A stretch of DNA of 64,000 bases from positions 186,001-250,000 of the IMG/VR virus record IMGVR_UViG_3300031669_000001. One strand, written 5' to 3'. Of this stretch, positions 16,917 to 55,236 are shown in pieces. Every line of letters begins with the position of its first letter. The stretch's first letter is position 1. The notes under the pieces are model-generated. The model had not been told where the DNA came from. It did no database searches and saw nothing but the letters and a program-made list of their open reading frames with translations. A program made the position numbers and the translations under genes.

Positions 16917-16992
16917 TGGTCGCCCTGGAGGGATTCGAACCCTCGATCGCGATTTTAGAGATCGCAGCTTTACCGCTAAGCATTACAAGGCG
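16917..16992 (-). tRNA. amber suppressor tRNA (anticodon CTA)
   Basis: Acceptor CGCCTTG/CAGGGCG-A-CCA, anticodon arm GCGAT-CTCTAAA-ATCGC, T arm GAGGG-TTCGAAT-CCCTC. Confidence 0.88.
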
Positions 16993-21043: not shown

Positions 21044-22374
21044 TCTTCTCTCTCATTCCATTTAGTTATTGCATCACCCATAACAAGACCAGTGTTGGAT
21101 CCAATCATGTAAGGTACTGATGGTCCTTGCGCTCCGCATTCACAAGTAACGTACACACGAACGGCAGGTTGACCATCGTAACCTATTCCAGTCGGTTGTT
21201 CACCACAGAACGGGCACAGTTCCAGTTGAGGATCACTCAACGCTTTCTTGACGGTAGCCTTCTTCGTATCATTTACAAAATCTTTGATTTCAGAAGGCTT
21301 CATGCCTTTGACAGCTTCTGTAAAGTCCAACTGTAACAAACGTGACACAGCGTGCTCCAATTGGATCAAAAATTTCTTCGAGCGCTTCATGTGAGTTTGA
21401 GTCATCGAGTTGATGAACTTTGAAACTTCTCTCAGCTTAACGCTCTTAACTTCTTCTCTGAACGAATTGACAACGTTGACGATCGGTTGTAGCAGAGGAT
21501 CTTCTTTGATCTTCAAGTCAGACTCGAACAATTCATTGATGAAGACACAGTTGTAGATCGCCTCGATGAACTTGCATTCACGAACGACATTAGTTGGAAC
21601 CCTAAAGGTTTCCAATTCTTTGTGAGTGAGATTTGTTACGTTCAAGCTCAAGAACATCTTCTGAACTGGAGTTAACGTAGATTCGATGTCATGCTCAAAT
21701 TCACTGAAATCGTGTTGACGATCCTTGACCAGACCACGTAGACGATTTACTTTATGTATCGCACCGATCTTCGACAAGAAATTCAAGCCTATGCTTGAAT
21801 GCTTCTCGGAAAATAATTTTTCCAATTCACCCCAGATGCGATCAGCAGACAGCGCGTCCAGTTCACCAGCGTTCACCAAATTTCTGCACAGCTCAATGGT
21901 GTCAGAGTGAATCAAGAAGCCGTAGCGAGCTGCGAAGCGAGCAACTCTCATGACGCGCAGAGGGTCTTCAGCGAACGCATCGCTGACGTGGCGGATGATA
22001 CCATTCTTCAGGTCTTCCATGCCGTTGAAAGGATCGATGTACTGATTGCCGTGACTCATTGCGATTGAATTTATCGTCAGATCACGACGAGACAGATCCT
22101 CTTCCAATGTAACGTCAGGGCTGAATTCAACTTCAAAGCCATGGTAGCCAGCAGCGACTTTCTTTTCGCGGCGAGCTAAAGCGTATTCTGAACCGTTTTC
22201 AGGGTGAAGGAAGACTGGAAAAGCGGCACCGACCTGCTTGTAACCTCGTTCAAGCATCCACTCAGGACTAGCACCGACTACAACGTAGTCGAAGTCCTTC
22301 GGAATGTTGCCGAGGATCAGGTCTCGAACGGCACCACCAACGAGATAAATTTGAGGATTCATTTCAGTTTTCAT
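21040..22374 (-). CDS. cca: tRNA nucleotidyltransferase (CCA-adding) with C-terminal CPFCG zinc-ribbon
   Basis: VGGAVRD, D.D, EEDL.RRDLTIN, EDPLR..R.ARF. Confidence 0.92.
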   Translation of the reverse strand: MKTEMNPQIYLVGGAVRDLILGNIPKDFDYVVVGASPEWMLERGYKQVGAAFPVFLHPENGSEYALARREKKVAAGYHGFEVEFSPDVTLEEDLSRRDLTINSIAMSHGNQYIDPFNGMEDLKNGIIRHVSDAFAEDPLRVMRVARFAARYGFLIHSDTIELCRNLVNAGELDALSADRIWGELEKLFSEKHSSIGLNFLSKIGAIHKVNRLRGLVKDRQHDFSEFEHDIESTLTPVQKMFLSLNVTNLTHKELETFRVPTNVVRECKFIEAIYNCVFINELFESDLKIKEDPLLQPIVNVVNSFREEVKSVKLREVSKFINSMTQTHMKRSKKFLIQLEHAVSRLLQLDFTEAVKGMKPSEIKDFVNDTKKATVKKALSDPQLELCPFCGEQPTGIGYDGQPAVRVYVTCECGAQGPSVPYMIGSNTGLVMGDAITKWNEREE

Positions 22375-26818: not shown

Positions 26819-26952
26819 GGTACACCTAGGCAGTTTTGAGCTACCGTCTTCCAATTGGGCTTACAAAATTATGCCAATTGAACGCTTTGACATTAAGCTA
26901 TAGGTGATTAGGTTTCCATTATATTACATCACTTTTAGAAAGTACAATTATT

Positions 26953-38881: not shown

Positions 38882-38981
38882 TGGTAGTCCCGCTCGGACT
38901 CGAACCGAGAATGTGCGCTAATCTGGCGCCACAGAGTGCCACTTTATAAGGGTGGTGTTTTACCAATTAAACTACAGGACC
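38882..38981 (-). tRNA. tRNA-Ile(TAT) with long variable arm
   Basis: GGTCCTG/CGGGACT, loop CTTATAA, CCA. Confidence 0.8.
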
Positions 38982-42361: not shown

Positions 42362-42420
42362 TCAATTCCTTTTGTTTGAATCGATAAAAGCATTATAACA
42401 CGATCTACAGAAAAGTACAC
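42362..42420 (-). repeat. about 60-bp early promoter/SD cassette, near-identical at 48379-48438 and partial at 46881-46919
   Basis: Shared GTTTGAATCGATAAAAGCATTATAACA.GATCTACAGAAAAGTACAC. Confidence 0.85.
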
Positions 42421-43499: not shown

Positions 43500-43591
43500 G
43501 GGTGGGACTGGTGGGATTCGAACCCACGATGTGAGCTTTCGCATGTACCGGATTAAAAGTCCGGTGTCTTCAACCTCTTGACTACAGACCC
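43500..43591 (-). tRNA. tRNA-Lys(TTT) with long variable arm
   Basis: Loop CTTTTAA, about 20-nt variable region. Confidence 0.78.
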
Positions 43592-43681
43592 ATTAAACAG
43601 CTTTGGAATCAGAGGTTGATTTACCAAAGCCATGGGTAGAAAATCGTTCCATGGCACATACTCCTTTTGTTGAAATTAAAT

Positions 43682-43756
43682 TGGTCCGCCCACGTGGAAT
43701 CGAACCACGGACCGGAGTTTAGAAGACTCCTGTTATATCCACTTAACTATGGGCAG
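43682..43756 (-). tRNA. tRNA-Arg(TCT)
   Basis: Loop CTTCTAA, CCA; 5' end overlaps the endonuclease stop codon. Confidence 0.88.
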
Positions 43757-44379
43757 AAACATTTTCTTCCTTTTGACCACCCTTGATCTAGGTAAGTCTG
43801 AAGAATATCTTTCTTGATCTTGATGGTTTTCTGTTGCTTTTCTGAGAAGATCCAGCAAGATCCAAATTGAGAGTTTCTATCACCGGATTGAGCAGATCTC
43901 ATTTTAGCTTTCGTATCTTCAGAGTGAGTCTTTCCGAACATCGGATTAGAGTCTGCTGAATTCAAATCGCTTAATTTTGCTCTTGATTCATATGAATGAG
44001 ATTTCCCTTGGAATTTTCCCTTGCCCATATTTGATTTTCTTGCAGCATTACTTGCATTGGACTCTATGCAGAACCCATTTCTTCTAATCTTTGTGATGTA
44101 TTCAAATCCACCGGTGCCGCCTCTTCTGAGGTTGTAGACATCATCACGAGAAAGAAACTCATCACTAACAATTTCTTTCTCCCTCGCATACATAGCTTCC
44201 GAATTCTCGAAAGTCTCAAGTATGACTTTTTCAAAGTTTTCGATCCCGTATCTTTTGATAGCACGACCGATAACTTTTCCAGAGCCCATGTACCCATCAT
44301 CAAAATTCTTGGTCTTATGAACTCCAACGTAGATTTTTCCATTCACCATGTTGGTGATTTGATAGATGCAATATTTCAT
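43747..44379 (-). CDS. GIY-YIG homing endonuclease (Seg-like) with NUMOD3 repeats
   Basis: CIY.ITN..NGKIYVG, YMGSG, YNL..GG.GG, GK.HS repeats. Confidence 0.9.
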   Translation of the reverse strand: MKYCIYQITNMVNGKIYVGVHKTKNFDDGYMGSGKVIGRAIKRYGIENFEKVILETFENSEAMYAREKEIVSDEFLSRDDVYNLRRGGTGGFEYITKIRRNGFCIESNASNAARKSNMGKGKFQGKSHSYESRAKLSDLNSADSNPMFGKTHSEDTKAKMRSAQSGDRNSQFGSCWIFSEKQQKTIKIKKDILQTYLDQGWSKGRKCFCP

Positions 44380-45209: not shown

Positions 45210-45284
45210 AGGCTCCCCAGGCTGGATTCGAACCAACGACCAAGTGATTAACAGTCACCTACTCTACCACTGAGCTACTAGGGA
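45210..45284 (-). tRNA. tRNA-Asn(GTT)
   Basis: Loop CTGTTAA; overlaps the endonuclease stop codon. Confidence 0.88.
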
Positions 45285-45917: not shown

Positions 45918-46011
45918 TGGCTCCCCCAGCAGGATTCGAACCTGCATACCGTTCGCGACGGACTACGAGTGGTTAACAGCCACTTCACTTGCCAGTTATG
46001 TGTACGGGGGA
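45918..46011 (-). tRNA. tRNA-Asn(GTT) with long variable arm
   Basis: Loop CTGTTAA, variable hairpin CCGT/ACGG, CCA. Confidence 0.8.
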
Positions 46012-46170: not shown

Positions 46171-46246
46171 TGGTGCACGGTGAAGGACTCGAACCTTCAT
46201 AATCAATCTTGTAAGGATTGCGGCTGACCTCTCACACCAACCGTGC
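46171..46246 (-). tRNA. tRNA-Val(TAC)
   Basis: Loop CTTACAA, CCA. Confidence 0.82.
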
Positions 46247-46451
46247 ATTGAGCAGTGGACAACTTCATCCACTGCACGTGGCTAGATGAACTACTCTGCC
46301 ATGTAAGCGGTCGTTTTTTCACTCCACAAGAGGAGCTTCATCCCGATTAATGTAACGGCAACCGTTACAAGCCACGCCCTCATTCGTCTAATTTTAAAGT
46401 GCCGACAGCGATCGCGTTCCGCATTGCACTTTTTACTGCTTTGAAAACAAC

Positions 46452-46474
46452 CGAGGAACCTTGAAGGTTCCTCG
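46452..46474 (-). terminator. terminator-like hairpin in front of the tRNA array
   Basis: CGAGGAACCTT/AAGGTTCCTCG followed by GTTGTTTT. Confidence 0.6.
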
Positions 46475-46500
46475 CTTTTGGATTACTAATTTAGGTTCTC

Positions 46501-46632
46501 TTAGTTCTGAGTTCCTGCTCCAATTACGAGGTTCTTTACTCTTTCATTCACGGCTGGCTGATTTACCTCACGGTTAATCCTGCAATCGCGTGCATGTTGT
46601 GTAAAGGGTTTCATTGTTATGGTAGTTTTCAT
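46501..46632 (-). CDS. 43-aa leader-like peptide
   Basis: Starts just after TATAAATA (46638-46645) and ends just before the hairpin. Confidence 0.4.
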   Translation of the reverse strand: MKTTITMKPFTQHARDCRINREVNQPAVNERVKNLVIGAGTQN

Positions 46633-46942
46633 GATTTTATTTATATGACAGCAAAAAATTCCAAATAAGTTAAGGTTCAAAGAACCATTAAGAGTGCTGC
46701 TTAGTTTTCAGCTTTGTAGTGAAAGTACATCACTGATCTTCAGACTAGCACTTTTAATGTTTCCTTCAAAGAAGCATTAAGGATGATTTTAAGTATCTTA
46801 GCTCTGAATCAGTAATCCACTTTAGCGTGGAACTTTATTCATCGTCAGGGTTACATACGATCATCTTTAATGTTTCCTCATCGATAAAAGCATTATAACA
46901 CGCTCTTCCAAAAAGTACATTACTTTGTGCAACTATTTTCAA

Positions 46943-47092
46943 AAGTACTCTGCAGGATAATCTCTCCGCTCTACCATTTGAGCTACCCAGCAGCGTTTGG
47001 CTACCGAGGCTGGATTCGAACCAACATCTGACTATGATCAATGATCCCATGCACGGAGGTCATTGACTGCAAAATTATCCTGCAAAGTACTT
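46943..47092 (-). ncRNA. permuted tRNA mimic closed by a 19-bp terminal stem
   Basis: T arm GTTGG-TTCGAAT-CCAGC, stem CTCGGTAGC/GCTGCTGGG, TA, D arm GCTC-AAATGGTA-GAGC. Confidence 0.7.
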
Positions 47093-47096
47093 GAGG

Positions 47097-47308
47097 TGGC
47101 GCTCTCGCAAGGATTCGAACCTCGACCTTGATGCCATTCACACGTGTTCGATAGGAAGTGGTAGACACATACGTGTCACTAACTACTAACGTGCTATCTT
47201 CATCAACATTACCCCGTGCCTTACCAATGCCTTTGATATTACGTTTGCACAACTCGTTTGACCCACAACAGTTCGCACGAGAATCTCAGGTTAGTCGGAT
47301 ACGAGAGC
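47097..47308 (-). ncRNA. 212-nt RNA with tRNA-like acceptor stem, T arm and CCA
   Basis: GCTCTCG/CGAGAGC-G-CCA; CGAGG-TTCGAAT-CCTTG. Confidence 0.7.
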
Positions 47309-47969
47309 GTAACCTCAAGTACTTTGCAGAAGAAACTCGTCTGAGGATTCGAACCTCTTAAGAGTGTGCGCACACCATACACCGAAATGTACCCCGTATA
47401 TCCACCACGGGCAAAGCTCTTTGATAAAACGGCTGCAGACCGGTAAATCTAGAGTAAGTTTCTTCAGCAAAGCACTTCAAATTTTATCTAACGGAGGTAG
47501 TTCGTCCGTTAGGGTAACTCATTTGAGTTACCTTTTAGCTCCAGAGGTAATTCGTCTGGACGGCAAGGGTGGTTAATCCCTTCTGTTCAAATTCTCTTTC
47601 GTCGACGGTCTGAGGATTCGAATCTCAGATTTGCCGCTCCGATGGCGCCATCTCGGCGAAAAAGAACTTTGTGAGGCTGCTTCAGCGAACGTTGTAGTGC
47701 ATGCGCTCAACATCCGACTTCCAGGATCCGTGCATCGCATGCGAGCCGATGCCTGGTATGCTTTTACATTACAAAAGCAGCTTTACAAAAGACGCCGTCA
47801 CGAACATTATACCGAAGAAAACCCATCCAACAAACGCGTCTTCCTTGTCGGTTTCCATAATCAACTGTCCAAGCAAAAAACCTGCTTACTAACCTAAATA
47901 GCACCAAGAGTTTCTCTGCCAAGCCATTGTAAAAATTGAATTATTTCTCTCATGCTTTACTCGTTGCAT

Positions 47970-48311
47970 CTACTGACAAACAGAAACAGTTGAGCACTTT
48001 TTGATAATTTCTTCAGTATTAATTGCGTCTACGTTACCTTTTGCTTGCGCGACCTGATCTTCATGATCTCCCCCCAGCTTACTTGCTGGAATGAGGAACA
48101 AGAAAACGGTAGCTGCATCAACATTTGCAGAATGATCCTGTGCAGCAGACGATACAGCAAGTTGCGTCTTTGCATTACACATAGCAGTTGATAACTCAGA
48201 GCACGAAAGGTTCGTGTATTTCTGCGGCGATACATAATCTGCATGAATACTCTCGGGACGAGTGGCACAACCAGCTAATAAAATTGCTGCTATAACTAAA
48301 ATCTTTTTCAT
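47970..48311 (-). CDS. lipoprotein
   Basis: Lipobox LLAGC. Confidence 0.8.
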   Translation of the reverse strand: MKKILVIAAILLAGCATRPESIHADYVSPQKYTNLSCSELSTAMCNAKTQLAVSSAAQDHSANVDAATVFLFLIPASKLGGDHEDQVAQAKGNVDAINTEEIIKKCSTVSVCQ

Positions 48312-48440
48312 TAAATTTTCCTTTAAAATTGAATTATTTCGCGCACTTCTTAGCGACTGCGAATCTAACCTTTCAAATCAATTCCTTTGTTGTTTGAATC
48401 GATAAAAGCATTATAACATGATCTACAGAAAAGTACACTA

Positions 48441-55105: not shown

Positions 55106-55236
55106 TGAATCGAGAAAGAGGCGAAAAGAGAGATTTTAGGGTTTTGCCATTAAACTATACCCACTAGGGGCAGCCGGAATCGAACCGACGTCACTCGTTT
55201 AAGAGACGAAGTAACTCTTTTCTGTGCAACGATTCA
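55106..55236 (-). ncRNA. Y-RNA-like handle family, copy 6 (T-acceptor-D module)
   Basis: GTCGG-TTCGATT-CCGGC, TGCCC/GGGTA, TA, GTTT-AATGGCA-AAAC inside the handle. Confidence 0.8.

What the first reader, a model, noticed from the sequence alone, without database searches (positions are those of the whole stretch)
46943..47329. Mutually exclusive long-range pairing between two adjacent tRNA mimics
Seen: the central segment 47074-47097 is complementary both to 47312-47329 (18/18, extending the acceptor of the 212-nt CCA-ended RNA and covering its terminal A) and to 46943-46961 (19 bp with one G:U, closing the permuted mimic). The two pairings share 13 nt and cannot both form fully. Inference: a co-transcriptional or processing switch that selects which RNA matures.
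Basis: partly seen in the sequence, partly recalled or inferred. Interest (0 to 1): 0.62.

Follow-up and report, generated by a model that had tools for sequence, protein, structure and literature searches.

The report
Three linked tRNA-like phage RNAs
A 345-kb soil phage encodes three adjacent tRNA-derived small RNAs whose closing stems reuse one 13-base sequence, so the strands can pair in two ways; the middle 217-nt RNA is abundant in soil RNA data, but a true maturation switch is not shown.

Summary
The pairings are real. 47312-47329 pairs 18/18 with 47080-47097, and 46943-46961 pairs 19 bp (one G:U) with 47074-47092; they share 13 nt.

On the minus strand, at the end of a jumbo phage's tRNA array, lie three closed RNA domains:
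- Unit 3 (47477-47317).
- Unit 2 (47313-47097): T arm, 7-bp acceptor, encoded CCA.
- Unit 1 (47092-46943): a permuted T-arm/closed-acceptor/D-arm module of the YrlA Y-RNA type. The phage encodes a Ro60/Rsr protein.

With all four strands present, the predicted best fold closes each domain separately, with no conflict. It is predicted to dominate only while the last strand is still untranscribed.

A soil metatranscriptome holds a 217-nt contig at depth 194, exactly 47313-47097, ending on the CCA. The mature middle RNA therefore keeps almost none of the contested strands, so the two RNAs need not exclude each other.

The long helix is best read as a precursor-only leader/trailer helix. No relatives were found, so conservation is untested. 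A regulated switch stays possible but unproven.

The parts
47457..47477 (-). F1: 5' strand of the closing stem of unit 3 (core AAGUGCUUUGCUG plus an inner part).
   Evidence: Inverted repeat I2, 21 nt, 90%. Paired with 47317-47337 in the MFE folds.
47317..47477 (-). Unit 3: about 161-nt closed domain. It has a 21-bp closing stem and a multiloop with a D-arm-like hairpin, a UUCG-capped hairpin, a further hairpin and a 4-bp T-arm-like hairpin (47357-47343). It looks like a degenerate tRNA.
   Evidence: Fold, z = -4.3. ARAGORN calls a tRNA-??? at 47335-47415 only at a relaxed threshold. No RF00005 hit.
47317..47337 (-). R1: 3' strand of the unit 3 stem.
47312..47316 (-). GAGGU: 5' strand of unit 2's own 5-bp closing helix. 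It pairs with ACCUC at 47097-47093.
   Evidence: MFE of the 551-nt region; pair probabilities 0.97-0.998 in both conformers.
47097..47313 (-). Unit 2: stable tRNA-like RNA of 212-217 nt. Acceptor 47308-47302 / 47107-47101, T arm 47124-47108 (loop UUCGAAU), discriminator G47100, encoded CCA 47099-47097. Two long arms (about 47299-47212 and 47209-47125) replace the D and anticodon arms.
   Evidence: RNA contig of 217 nt, depth 194, 0 mismatches, exactly these ends, in run X2. A 166-nt contig 47129-47294 is present in run X4. Constrained fold.
47093..47097 (-). ACCUC: 3' strand of unit 2's closing helix. Its first base is the A of the CCA.
47071..47092 (-). F2: 5' strand of the unit 1 closing stem (core AAGUACUUUGCAG, 47092-47080).
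   Evidence: I3. 22-bp helix in the fold.
46943..47092 (-). Unit 1: 150-nt YrlA-type (Y RNA-like) permuted tRNA mimic. V hairpin 47067-47037; T arm 47025-47009; closed acceptor-like stem 47008-46986 with an internal GCCA (CCA = 47000-46998); D arm 46983-46968.
   Evidence: RF02553 partial hit, 30 bits, E = 5.9e-4. Fold, z = -5.4. The T arm and acceptor 3' strand are 25/27 identical to the phage tRNA-Asn, and acceptor pairs are kept by double changes.
46943..46964 (-). R2: 3' strand of the unit 1 closing stem, followed by UUUUG.
46892..46918 (-). Phage promoter of the class GTACTTTT-N11-TG[AT]TATAAT, directly downstream of unit 1. It marks the end of the RNA cluster's transcription unit.
   Evidence: 19 exact copies of this motif in the genome.
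47785..47842 (-). 3' end region of the upstream lipoprotein mRNA. The RNA contig stops at 47785, after a U run. This sets the upstream limit for the RNA cluster's transcript.
   Evidence: Run X2 contig 47785-47900 and beyond, 612 nt; sequence.

Best explanation
The locus is a tandem cluster of three tRNA-derived non-coding RNA genes on the minus strand. It sits at the end of the tRNA array of a 345-kb soil jumbo phage that also encodes a Ro60/Rsr protein, a CCA-adding-family enzyme and its own tmRNA.

Unit 3 and unit 1 are each closed by a long stem of about 20 bp, and the two stems share a 13-bp core. Unit 1 is a circularly permuted tRNA mimic of the YrlA (bacterial Y RNA) type. Unit 2 lies between them. 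It is a 212-217-nt RNA with a T arm, acceptor stem and encoded CCA, and it accumulates to high level.

Because the two outer stems use the same core, the strand just upstream of unit 2 (R1) is perfectly complementary to the strand just downstream (F2). The four strands F1, R1, F2 and R2 can therefore pair in two topologies:
- Tandem: F1:R1 plus F2:R2, with all three domains closed. This is the predicted ground state.
- Nested: R1:F2 plus F1:R2.

Inferred mechanism: during transcription F1:R1 forms first. Once F2 emerges, R1:F2 is thermodynamically preferred until R2 is made. This transiently clamps the two ends of unit 2 into a long helix stacked on its acceptor stem. That helix exists only in the precursor and acts like the processing stalks around rRNAs. 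Unit 2 is released by cuts at 47314|47313 and 47097|47096. This leaves F2 intact on the downstream fragment and R1 on the upstream one, so the flanking RNAs can still close.

Shown: the complementarities, the predicted energetics, the RNA ends and abundance of unit 2, the permuted tRNA architecture, and the rsr gene. Inferred: that R1:F2 forms in vivo, which nuclease cuts, and that units 1 and 3 bind Rsr.
For: - Four-strand complementarity.
- The MFE of 47485-46935 is three abutting closed domains at -192.8 kcal/mol. The forced R1:F2 state is -188.4 and then pairs F1 with R2. Ensemble shares are 0.87 against 0.13.
- Prefix folding: F1:R1 is about 1.0 until 47093. R1:F2 is 0.98-0.999 from 47080 to 46955. 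The tandem state returns at 46943.
- The estimated barrier for F1:R1 to R1:F2 is about 11 kcal/mol, an upper bound.
- R1:F2 has a perfect core (13/13 Watson-Crick). F2:R2 has one G:U. F1:R1 has one G:U plus one U.U (read directly).
- The inner parts of the two outer stems differ in sequence but stay complementary within each unit.
- The leader/trailer duplex is unique among 52 tRNA genes: -31.8 against a median of -7.8 kcal/mol.
- RNA contig exactly 47313-47097 at depth 194, with zero depth on both flanks. In the same run the neighbouring mRNA is at depth 4.8. A second study has a contig inside unit 2.
- YrlA partial hit and permuted T/AS/D order. TROVE protein of 516 aa in the genome.
- Precedent: M. 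smegmatis YrlA and YrlB are processed from a single precursor, and that YrlA has a 7-bp acceptor, RNase P cleavage and a CCA end (PMC4201824).
Against: - No relative carrying the arrangement was found, so neither helix has covariation support from other genomes.
- All energetics are nearest-neighbour predictions, and a 4.4 kcal/mol difference out of about 190 is within model error.
- The RNA data are assembled contigs, not reads. Ends are good to a few nt at best, and the strand is not given.
- Units 1 and 3 (150-165 nt) are absent from the RNA contigs. This could mean they do not accumulate, or only that RNAs under about 200 nt were lost in library preparation.
- The contig ends give a 1-nt 5' overhang, not the 2-nt 3' overhang of RNase III, and the 5' end is 5 nt upstream of the canonical RNase P site.
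- Unit 1 lacks the GNCGAAN0-1G motif proposed for Rsr binding, and rsr lies about 98 kb away.
- The 217-nt RNA on its own folds no better than shuffled sequence (z = -0.2).
Confidence: 0.5

Rival explanations
1. Pure by-product. The two flanking RNAs share a closing-stem core because both bind the same protein (for example the phage Rsr) or arose by duplication. R1:F2 complementarity is then automatic, and unit 2 needs only its own 5-bp helix plus its acceptor. The long helix never matters in vivo. The transcript folds domain by domain into the tandem state, and ordinary tRNA-type processing releases the RNAs.
For:
- The tandem state is the MFE and forms first during transcription.
- The mature unit 2 contains neither strand.
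- The estimated barrier to exchange is not negligible, about 11 kcal/mol.
Against: - R1:F2 is the only perfect core pairing of the four possible. All three core substitutions lie on the outer strands F1 and R2.
- The helix continues two further pairs beyond the core on the inner side (U:G, U:A) and stacks on the acceptor through only a 2x2 loop.
- At equilibrium it is strongly preferred while R2 is absent.
- With only three substitutions, the first argument is weak (chance about 1 in 8).
Confidence: 0.3
2. Each transcript commits either to the nested fold, which matures the 212-nt RNA (with cleavage in the long helix destroying the stems of both neighbours), or to the tandem fold, which matures the Y-like RNAs. 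The choice would be set by transcription speed, Rsr binding or infection stage.
For: - Two topologies of similar predicted energy, with a high interconversion barrier once complete: about 35-40 kcal/mol by direct path, an upper bound.
- A transient thermodynamic preference for R1:F2.
- Only unit 2 is seen in RNA contigs from two studies.
Against: - The observed ends of unit 2 leave R1 and F2 intact on the neighbouring fragments, so maturation of unit 2 does not by itself preclude the neighbours.
- The absence of units 1 and 3 from the RNA contigs can be explained by size selection.
- There are no time-course, conservation or effector data.
- The phage has no RNase III gene, so any such cleavage would depend on the host enzyme.
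Confidence: 0.13
3. The repeated 13-mers act at the DNA level. They could be terminal inverted repeats of two small mobile insertions flanking unit 2, or binding sites related to the phage promoter's upstream element GTACTTTT.
For: - The core resembles the upstream half of a 19-copy phage promoter motif, GTACTTTT-N11-TG[AT]TATAAT.
- Each outer unit is bounded by inverted repeats whose outermost 13 bp are shared.
Against: - No acceptable -10 element follows either forward copy at the consensus spacing (read).
- There are no target-site duplications.
- Only these four good copies exist in 345 kb.
- The exceptions to complementarity are G:U pairs valid only in minus-strand RNA.
- The units contain canonical tRNA arms, and acceptor pairs are conserved by double changes.
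Confidence: 0.05

Closest known systems
YrlA-type bacterial and phage Y RNAs (Rfam RF02553; Chen et al. 2014, PMC4201824), partners of Ro60/Rsr
   Same: Unit 1 has the defining layout: 5' and 3' ends paired in a long stem, a V hairpin, then a T arm, a closed acceptor-like stem and a D arm in permuted order, with tRNA-like conserved bases. The genome encodes a TROVE (Ro60/Rsr) protein. Like M. smegmatis YrlA, it has a 7-bp acceptor, here with a ready-made GCCA. Characterised bacteria carry two or more Y RNAs, in M. smegmatis processed from one precursor.
   Different: There is no GNCGAAN0-1G motif near the 5' end. The Rfam score is 30 bits against a gathering score of 69. rsr is about 98 kb away rather than within 2 kb. 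The closing stem is a long, nearly perfect duplex without an obvious bulged Ro site. The stem strands are shared, by complementarity, with a neighbouring RNA's leader/trailer helix.
Leader/trailer processing stalks of bacterial rRNA precursors (RNase III substrates); established knowledge, not tested here
   Same: A helix of 20 bp or more, formed by sequences flanking a stable RNA, brings its two ends together. The mature RNA's ends lie at the base of the helix, and the helix is absent from the mature RNA.
   Different: Here the stalk encloses a tRNA-like RNA. Its strands double as stem strands of two neighbouring RNAs. The contig ends do not show the RNase III 2-nt 3' overhang.
T4 RNAC and RNAD: small stable RNAs of unknown role encoded in the T4 tRNA region (PMC3014915, PMC9697503)
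   Same: Unit 2 is likewise a stable, abundant small RNA of unknown function encoded within a phage tRNA gene cluster.
   Different: No sequence relation was tested or found. Unit 2 is larger (about 212-217 nt) and is flanked by Y-like RNAs. I did not verify the structure of the T4 RNAs here.
Permuted (two-piece) tmRNA and permuted tRNA genes
   Same: In unit 1 the 3' half of a tRNA-like module is encoded before the 5' half. The same phage carries a permuted tmRNA.
   Different: Unit 1 has no anticodon loop and no tag reading frame. There is no evidence of circularisation or ligation, and no RtcB in the genome.

Membership tests
YrlA / bacterial Y RNA (unit 1) | T stem-loop, closed acceptor-like stem-loop and D stem-loop in that permuted order, with tRNA-like conserved bases | tested here: met
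   The RF02553 alignment covers model positions 25-83 with a T loop UUCGAAU and a D arm GUAGCUCAAAUGGUAGAGC. The MFE reproduces all three hairpins.
YrlA / bacterial Y RNA (unit 1) | 5' and 3' ends pair in a long stem, with a V hairpin upstream of the T arm | tested here: met
   19-22-bp stem 47092-47071 / 46964-46943 and V hairpin 47067-47037.
YrlA / bacterial Y RNA (unit 1) | GNCGAAN0-1G motif near the 5' end (proposed Rsr contact; PMC4201824) | tested here: not met
   Reading 47092-47030 on the minus strand shows no such motif. The only CGAA is in the T loop.
YrlA / bacterial Y RNA (unit 1) | Reaches the Rfam gathering score | tested here: not met
   30 bits against 69. Caveat: eight other phage loci with the same permuted layout also gave no RF02553 hit at gathering score, so the model is narrow.
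YrlA / bacterial Y RNA (unit 1) | Encoded close to rsr on the same strand, with a Ro60 ortholog present | tested here: inconclusive
   A 516-aa TROVE protein is present on the same strand, but about 98 kb away. The region upstream of rsr holds small ORFs and no Y RNA.
YrlA / bacterial Y RNA (unit 1) | Binds Ro60/Rsr | not testable with these tools
   Needs a pull-down or EMSA.
Canonical tRNA (unit 2) | Cloverleaf with a D arm and a 7-nt anticodon loop | tested here: not met
   No RF00005 match at E up to 10 over 46240-48200. No ARAGORN call even at a relaxed threshold. About 175 nt lie between the acceptor 5' strand and the T arm.
Canonical tRNA (unit 2) | T arm, 7-bp acceptor stem, discriminator and 3' CCA | tested here: met
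   Sequence reading and constrained fold. The RNA contig ends on the CCA.
tmRNA (unit 2) | G3:U70 alanine identity pair, tag reading frame, pseudoknots, detection by ARAGORN or Rfam | tested here: not met
   Pair 3:70 is U:A. No tmRNA call here. A genuine permuted tmRNA lies at C1:306555-306937. The genome has no SmpB.
Intron-containing tRNA (unit 2) | A spliced form in RNA; an intron family match | tested here: not met
   The RNA contig is colinear with the DNA over all 217 nt and no joints were reported. There is no intron family hit over unit 2.
rRNA-type leader/trailer processing stalk (R1:F2 helix) | A long duplex formed by the flanks of a stable RNA, with mature ends at its base | tested here: met
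   20 bp plus a 2x2 loop plus the acceptor. -31.8 kcal/mol, unique among the phage's tRNA-type genes. RNA ends at 47313 and 47097.
rRNA-type leader/trailer processing stalk (R1:F2 helix) | Cleavage by RNase III (2-nt 3' overhang) | tested here: inconclusive
   The contig ends imply a 1-nt 5' overhang, but contigs do not give exact ends and trimming may follow. There is no phage RNase III.
RNA conformational switch | Two mutually exclusive folds of comparable energy | tested here: met
   -192.8 against -188.4 kcal/mol. The preference is predicted to reverse during transcription.
RNA conformational switch | Both alternatives conserved or covarying in relatives; distinct outputs | not testable with these tools
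   No relatives with the arrangement were found. One 96%-identical DNA contig (run X5, 47016-47250) reports no change within 47074-47097, but it does not reach the partner strands.

The most novel reading that the evidence does not exclude
The four homologous strands F1, R1, F2 and R2 form an RNA strand-exchange device resembling a Holliday junction. It would partition each nascent transcript between two outcomes. In the tandem fold, two Ro-type Y RNAs and the 217-nt tRNA-like RNA all mature. In the nested fold, only the 217-nt RNA matures, at the expense of its neighbours. Transcription speed or Rsr binding would set the ratio. The 217-nt CCA-ended RNA would itself be a new class of abundant phage effector RNA.
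Probability: 0.12. Interest if true: 0.75.

Novelty: new variant of a known kind. Interest (0 to 1): 0.5.

Why it matters
Phage Y RNAs and Ro60 homologs are known, but how they are made and what accompanies them is largely unknown.

This locus offers three things:
- A compact, testable case in which three tRNA-derived RNAs are physically coupled through shared stem sequences.
- A predicted co-transcriptional refolding path.
- A previously undescribed 217-nt tRNA-like RNA that makes up a visible share of a soil metatranscriptome.

If the exchange of strands controls yield, it would be a new way for a virus to set the ratio of small RNAs from one transcript. If not, the locus still adds a new abundant phage RNA and an unusual Y-RNA variant. 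That variant appears to derive from the phage's own tRNA-Asn lineage.

Tried and rejected
- **tmRNA reading of unit 2:** rejected. Pair 3:70 is U:A, ARAGORN makes no call, and a genuine permuted tmRNA lies elsewhere.
- **tRNA with an intron:** rejected. The RNA contig is colinear with the DNA, there is no intron family hit, and there is no D arm.
- **Protein-coding reading:** the five small ORFs overlapping the locus have no Pfam match.
- **Forward 13-mers as promoters:** rejected for lack of a -10 element at the consensus spacing.
- **MITE-like reading:** no target duplications and no other copies.
- **Similarity of the core to the GGUUACUUCG / YUAY region of other phage YrlA-like RNAs:** the [AT]TACTT[CT] motif is present in 8 of 36 Y-like loci and 0 of 43 adjacent-tRNA controls. 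However, it sits at the V-arm junction there, not at the 5' end. I treat it as a weak lead, not as evidence.
- **Searches for relatives,** all empty or returning only generic tRNA arms:
  - the phage database by blastn;
  - exact or degenerate patterns in viral, metagenome and genome contigs;
  - a neighbouring HD-domain protein;
  - Rsr, which found one 55-kb fragment without the locus;
  - five large phage records;
  - homologs of the lipoprotein neighbour, which are bacterial and not syntenic phage genes.
- **Rfam scan of other phage Y-like loci,** run to see the full YrlA consensus: it gave only tRNA hits.
- **Genetic code:** no alternative code was applied, although a CUA-anticodon tRNA is present.
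Full report
**Context.** The window is bases 186001-250000 of a 345,069-bp virus record with direct terminal repeats, from a soil metagenome. It carries 52 tRNA genes, nearly all on the minus strand, and a permuted tmRNA. It also carries a CCA-adding-family enzyme and a 516-aa TROVE-domain protein, that is a Ro60/Rsr ortholog. The finding lies on the minus strand, just beyond the last gene of the main tRNA array (tRNA-Val 46171-46246). All coordinates below are window coordinates, and sequences are read 5' to 3' on the minus strand.

**Observation.** The reported complementarities are real.
- The repeat finder gives arms 47075-47107 / 47302-47334 (33 nt, 88%), which contain the perfect 18-bp block 47329-47312: 47080-47097.
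- It also gives arms 46943-46961 / 47074-47092 (19 nt, one G:U).
- The A of the encoded CCA (47097) pairs with U47312. The shared stretch is 47080-47092.
- An 18-nt perfect inverted repeat exceeds all 60 dinucleotide shuffles of the region (mean 10.2, maximum 14).
- The flank duplex of -31.8 kcal/mol has no equal among the flanks of the phage's 52 tRNA genes (median -7.8).

One search also reports arms 47317-47337 / 47457-47477 (21 nt, 90%). The 13-mer AAGTACTTTGCAG occurs four times in alternating orientation, at 47477, 47329, 47092 and 46955. Genome-wide these are the only copies with zero or one mismatch that cluster. So there are four strands:
- F1 (47477-47457)
- R1 (47337-47317)
- F2 (47092-47071)
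- R2 (46964-46943)

There are three RNA domains.
- **Unit 3** (47477-47317) is closed by F1:R1. It contains a D-arm-like hairpin, a UUCG-capped hairpin and a short T-arm-like hairpin. ARAGORN sees it as a defective tRNA only at a relaxed threshold.
- **Unit 2** has a 7-bp acceptor (47308-47302 / 47107-47101), a canonical T arm (47124-47108), discriminator G and encoded CCA (47099-47097). It is closed beyond the acceptor by a 2x2 loop and its own 5-bp helix GAGGU:ACCUC (47316-47312 / 47097-47093).
- **Unit 1** (47092-46943) is closed by F2:R2. It contains a V hairpin, a T arm, a closed acceptor-like stem with an internal GCCA, and a D arm.

**Two topologies.** Folding 47485-46935 with all four strands present gives an MFE of -192.8 kcal/mol. 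In it the three domains abut without a single spacer nucleotide, and each is closed by its own helix. In that fold F1 pairs with R2, so the arrangement is nested. The ensemble is about 0.87 tandem and 0.13 nested.

**Predicted folding during transcription.** Equilibrium folding of growing prefixes gives this sequence:
- F1:R1 is at about 1.0 until 47093 is made.
- R1:F2 is at 0.98-0.999 from 47080 until about 46955, that is while R2 does not yet exist.
- The tandem state returns (0.87-0.98) once R2 is complete.

A direct-path estimate puts the barrier for F1:R1 to R1:F2 at about 11 kcal/mol. The barrier between the two complete folds is 35-40 kcal/mol. Both are upper bounds. So a transient R1:F2 helix is plausible but not assured, and either final fold could be kinetically trapped.

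**Is R1:F2 more than a by-product?** The four cores are:
- F1: AAGUGCUUUGCUG
- F2: AAGUACUUUGCAG
- R1: CUGCAAAGUACUU
- R2: CUGCAGAGUACUU

R1:F2 is 13/13 Watson-Crick. F2:R2 has one G:U. F1:R1 has one G:U and one U.U. The three substitutions all lie in the outer strands. This hints at constraint on R1:F2, but with three events the chance is about 1 in 8. The inner parts of the two outer stems differ (AAGAAACU:AGUUUCUU against GAUAAU:AUUAUC) yet are complementary within each unit. That supports both outer stems as real RNA helices.

**RNA evidence.** One soil metatranscriptome (X2, 28 million letters) contains a 217-nt contig at depth 194, identical to 47097-47313. Nothing lies on either side of it. 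In the same run the upstream lipoprotein mRNA is at depth 4.8 and stops at a U run at 47785. A metatranscriptome from another study (X4) has a 166-nt contig at 47129-47294. This has four consequences:
- Unit 2 is a discrete, abundant RNA ending on its CCA and starting 5 nt upstream of the canonical +1.
- Cuts at 47314|47313 and 47097|47096 would leave R1 on the upstream fragment and F2 on the downstream one.
- All three RNAs can therefore come from one transcript.

Caveats:
- These are contigs, not reads. The strand is unknown and exact ends are uncertain.
- The depth cannot come from DNA, because the flanks are empty.
- Units 1 and 3 (150-165 nt) may simply have been lost with other RNAs under 200 nt, so their absence is not evidence that they do not mature.

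**Identity of unit 1.** The permissive Rfam scan gives YrlA (RF02553) at 47031-46966: 30 bits, E = 5.9e-4, model positions 25-83, covering T arm, closed stem and D arm in permuted order. The score is below gathering (69). The same model also gives sub-threshold hits in 13 of 14 control genomes, so the score alone is weak. The architecture is what counts, and I confirmed it by folding.

Unit 1 fits the YrlA description in Chen et al. 2014 (PMC4201824): terminal stem, V, T, AS and D. Like the M. smegmatis YrlA it has a 7-bp acceptor, here followed by GCCA. It fails on two points. It has no GNCGAAN0-1G motif, and rsr is about 98 kb away, with only small ORFs upstream of it.

Its T arm and acceptor 3' strand are 25/27 identical to the phage's tRNA-Asn (45211-45284), and its D arm is similar. 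Two acceptor pairs differ on both sides yet still pair. This suggests descent from that tRNA lineage under selection for the closed stem.

Permuted T/closed-stem/D modules are common in phage contigs: 36 non-redundant Y-like cases in one pattern scan. A second, more typical one lies in this window at about 55125-55215.

**Identity of unit 2.**
- It has no Rfam match at E up to 10.
- It is not called as a tRNA or tmRNA.
- It has U3:A70 rather than G3:U70.
- It shows no spliced form.
- It has no paralog in the genome.

With the T arm enforced it folds as an oversized cloverleaf with two long arms. Alone, it is no more stable than shuffles (z = -0.2). [quoted passage not shown] Its function is unknown. 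I propose only that it is a stable tRNA-like RNA handled by tRNA-end enzymes. This is an inference from the CCA end, and two thirds of the phage's tRNAs also encode CCA.

**Mechanism and rivals.**
- **Best-supported reading (confidence about 0.5):** a tandem cluster whose four exchangeable strands give a precursor-only leader/trailer helix around unit 2. This is analogous to rRNA processing stalks, and the tandem fold is the end state.
- **By-product rival (about 0.3):** the shared core exists only because both outer RNAs need the same stem.
not excluded, but the non-overlapping mature RNAs and the fourth strand remove its main premise.
- **DNA-level readings such as promoter-like sites or inverted-repeat elements (about 0.05):** these fit poorly. 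The core does resemble the upstream half of a 19-copy phage promoter motif, but there is no -10 at the consensus spacing and the exceptions to complementarity are RNA-specific G:U pairs.

**Conservation.** No relative with this arrangement was found in the phage database, IMG/VR, JGI metagenome contigs or GTDB genomes. One freshwater-sediment DNA contig (X5, 47016-47250, 8 differences and 1 insertion) is a relative at about 96% identity. It reports no change within 47074-47097, but it does not reach R1 or R2.

Noticed in passing
window 55125-55215 (minus): A second, more typical YrlA-like RNA lies between two tRNA-Gly genes. It has a GUUACUUCG...CGAG V region, a T arm CCGGUUCGAUUCCGG, a closed stem, a D-like arm and a GAAAAGAG/CUCUUUUC terminal stem. 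RF02553 scores 25.5 bits.
   Followed up: partly
window 47489-47805 (minus): A further structured region lies upstream of unit 3 (z = -5.0). It contains a T-arm-like hairpin at about 47627-47607 and two near-identical hairpins with loops CGAAUUACC (47559-47541) and CGAACUACC (47511-47489). No RNA contig covers it.
   Followed up: partly
G000:C1:306555-306937 (minus), outside the window: The phage encodes a permuted (two-piece) tmRNA with tag ANDANGALALAA, but no SmpB. Two-piece tmRNA suggests an alpha- or beta-proteobacterial type host.
   Followed up: partly
window 16917-16992 (minus): A tRNA with anticodon CUA, called tRNA-Pyl by ARAGORN, is a potential amber suppressor. I did not examine whether the phage recodes TAG.
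   Followed up: no
whole genome, e.g. window 46892-46918, 48410-48436 and 42392-42418 (minus): A phage promoter-like motif GTACTTTT-N11-TG[AT]TATAAT has 19 exact copies, 18 of them on the minus strand. In run X2 an mRNA contig starts a few nt after the copy at 48436.
   Followed up: partly
window 43500-43592, 45918-46011, 38885-38981, 26821-26907 (minus): Several tRNA genes are 87-97 nt long. For example, tRNA-Asn 45918-46011 has a 17-nt insertion before the T arm relative to its paralog. Two of them are found only by Rfam, not by ARAGORN.
   Followed up: no
window 43747-44379 (minus): A GIY-YIG / NUMOD3 homing-endonuclease-like gene sits inside the tRNA array.
   Followed up: no
window 47970-48311 (minus): A 113-aa lipoprotein-like gene (signal peptide ending LAGC) has its nearest homologs (about 55% identity) in Betaproteobacteria-labelled metagenome bins. 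This is a possible host hint. Its mRNA is seen in run X2 from about 48396 to 47785.
   Followed up: partly
window 21991-22350 (minus; G000:C1:207991-208350): A 457-aa open frame matches the PolyA_pol / CCA-adding nucleotidyltransferase family (77.8 bits).
   Followed up: no
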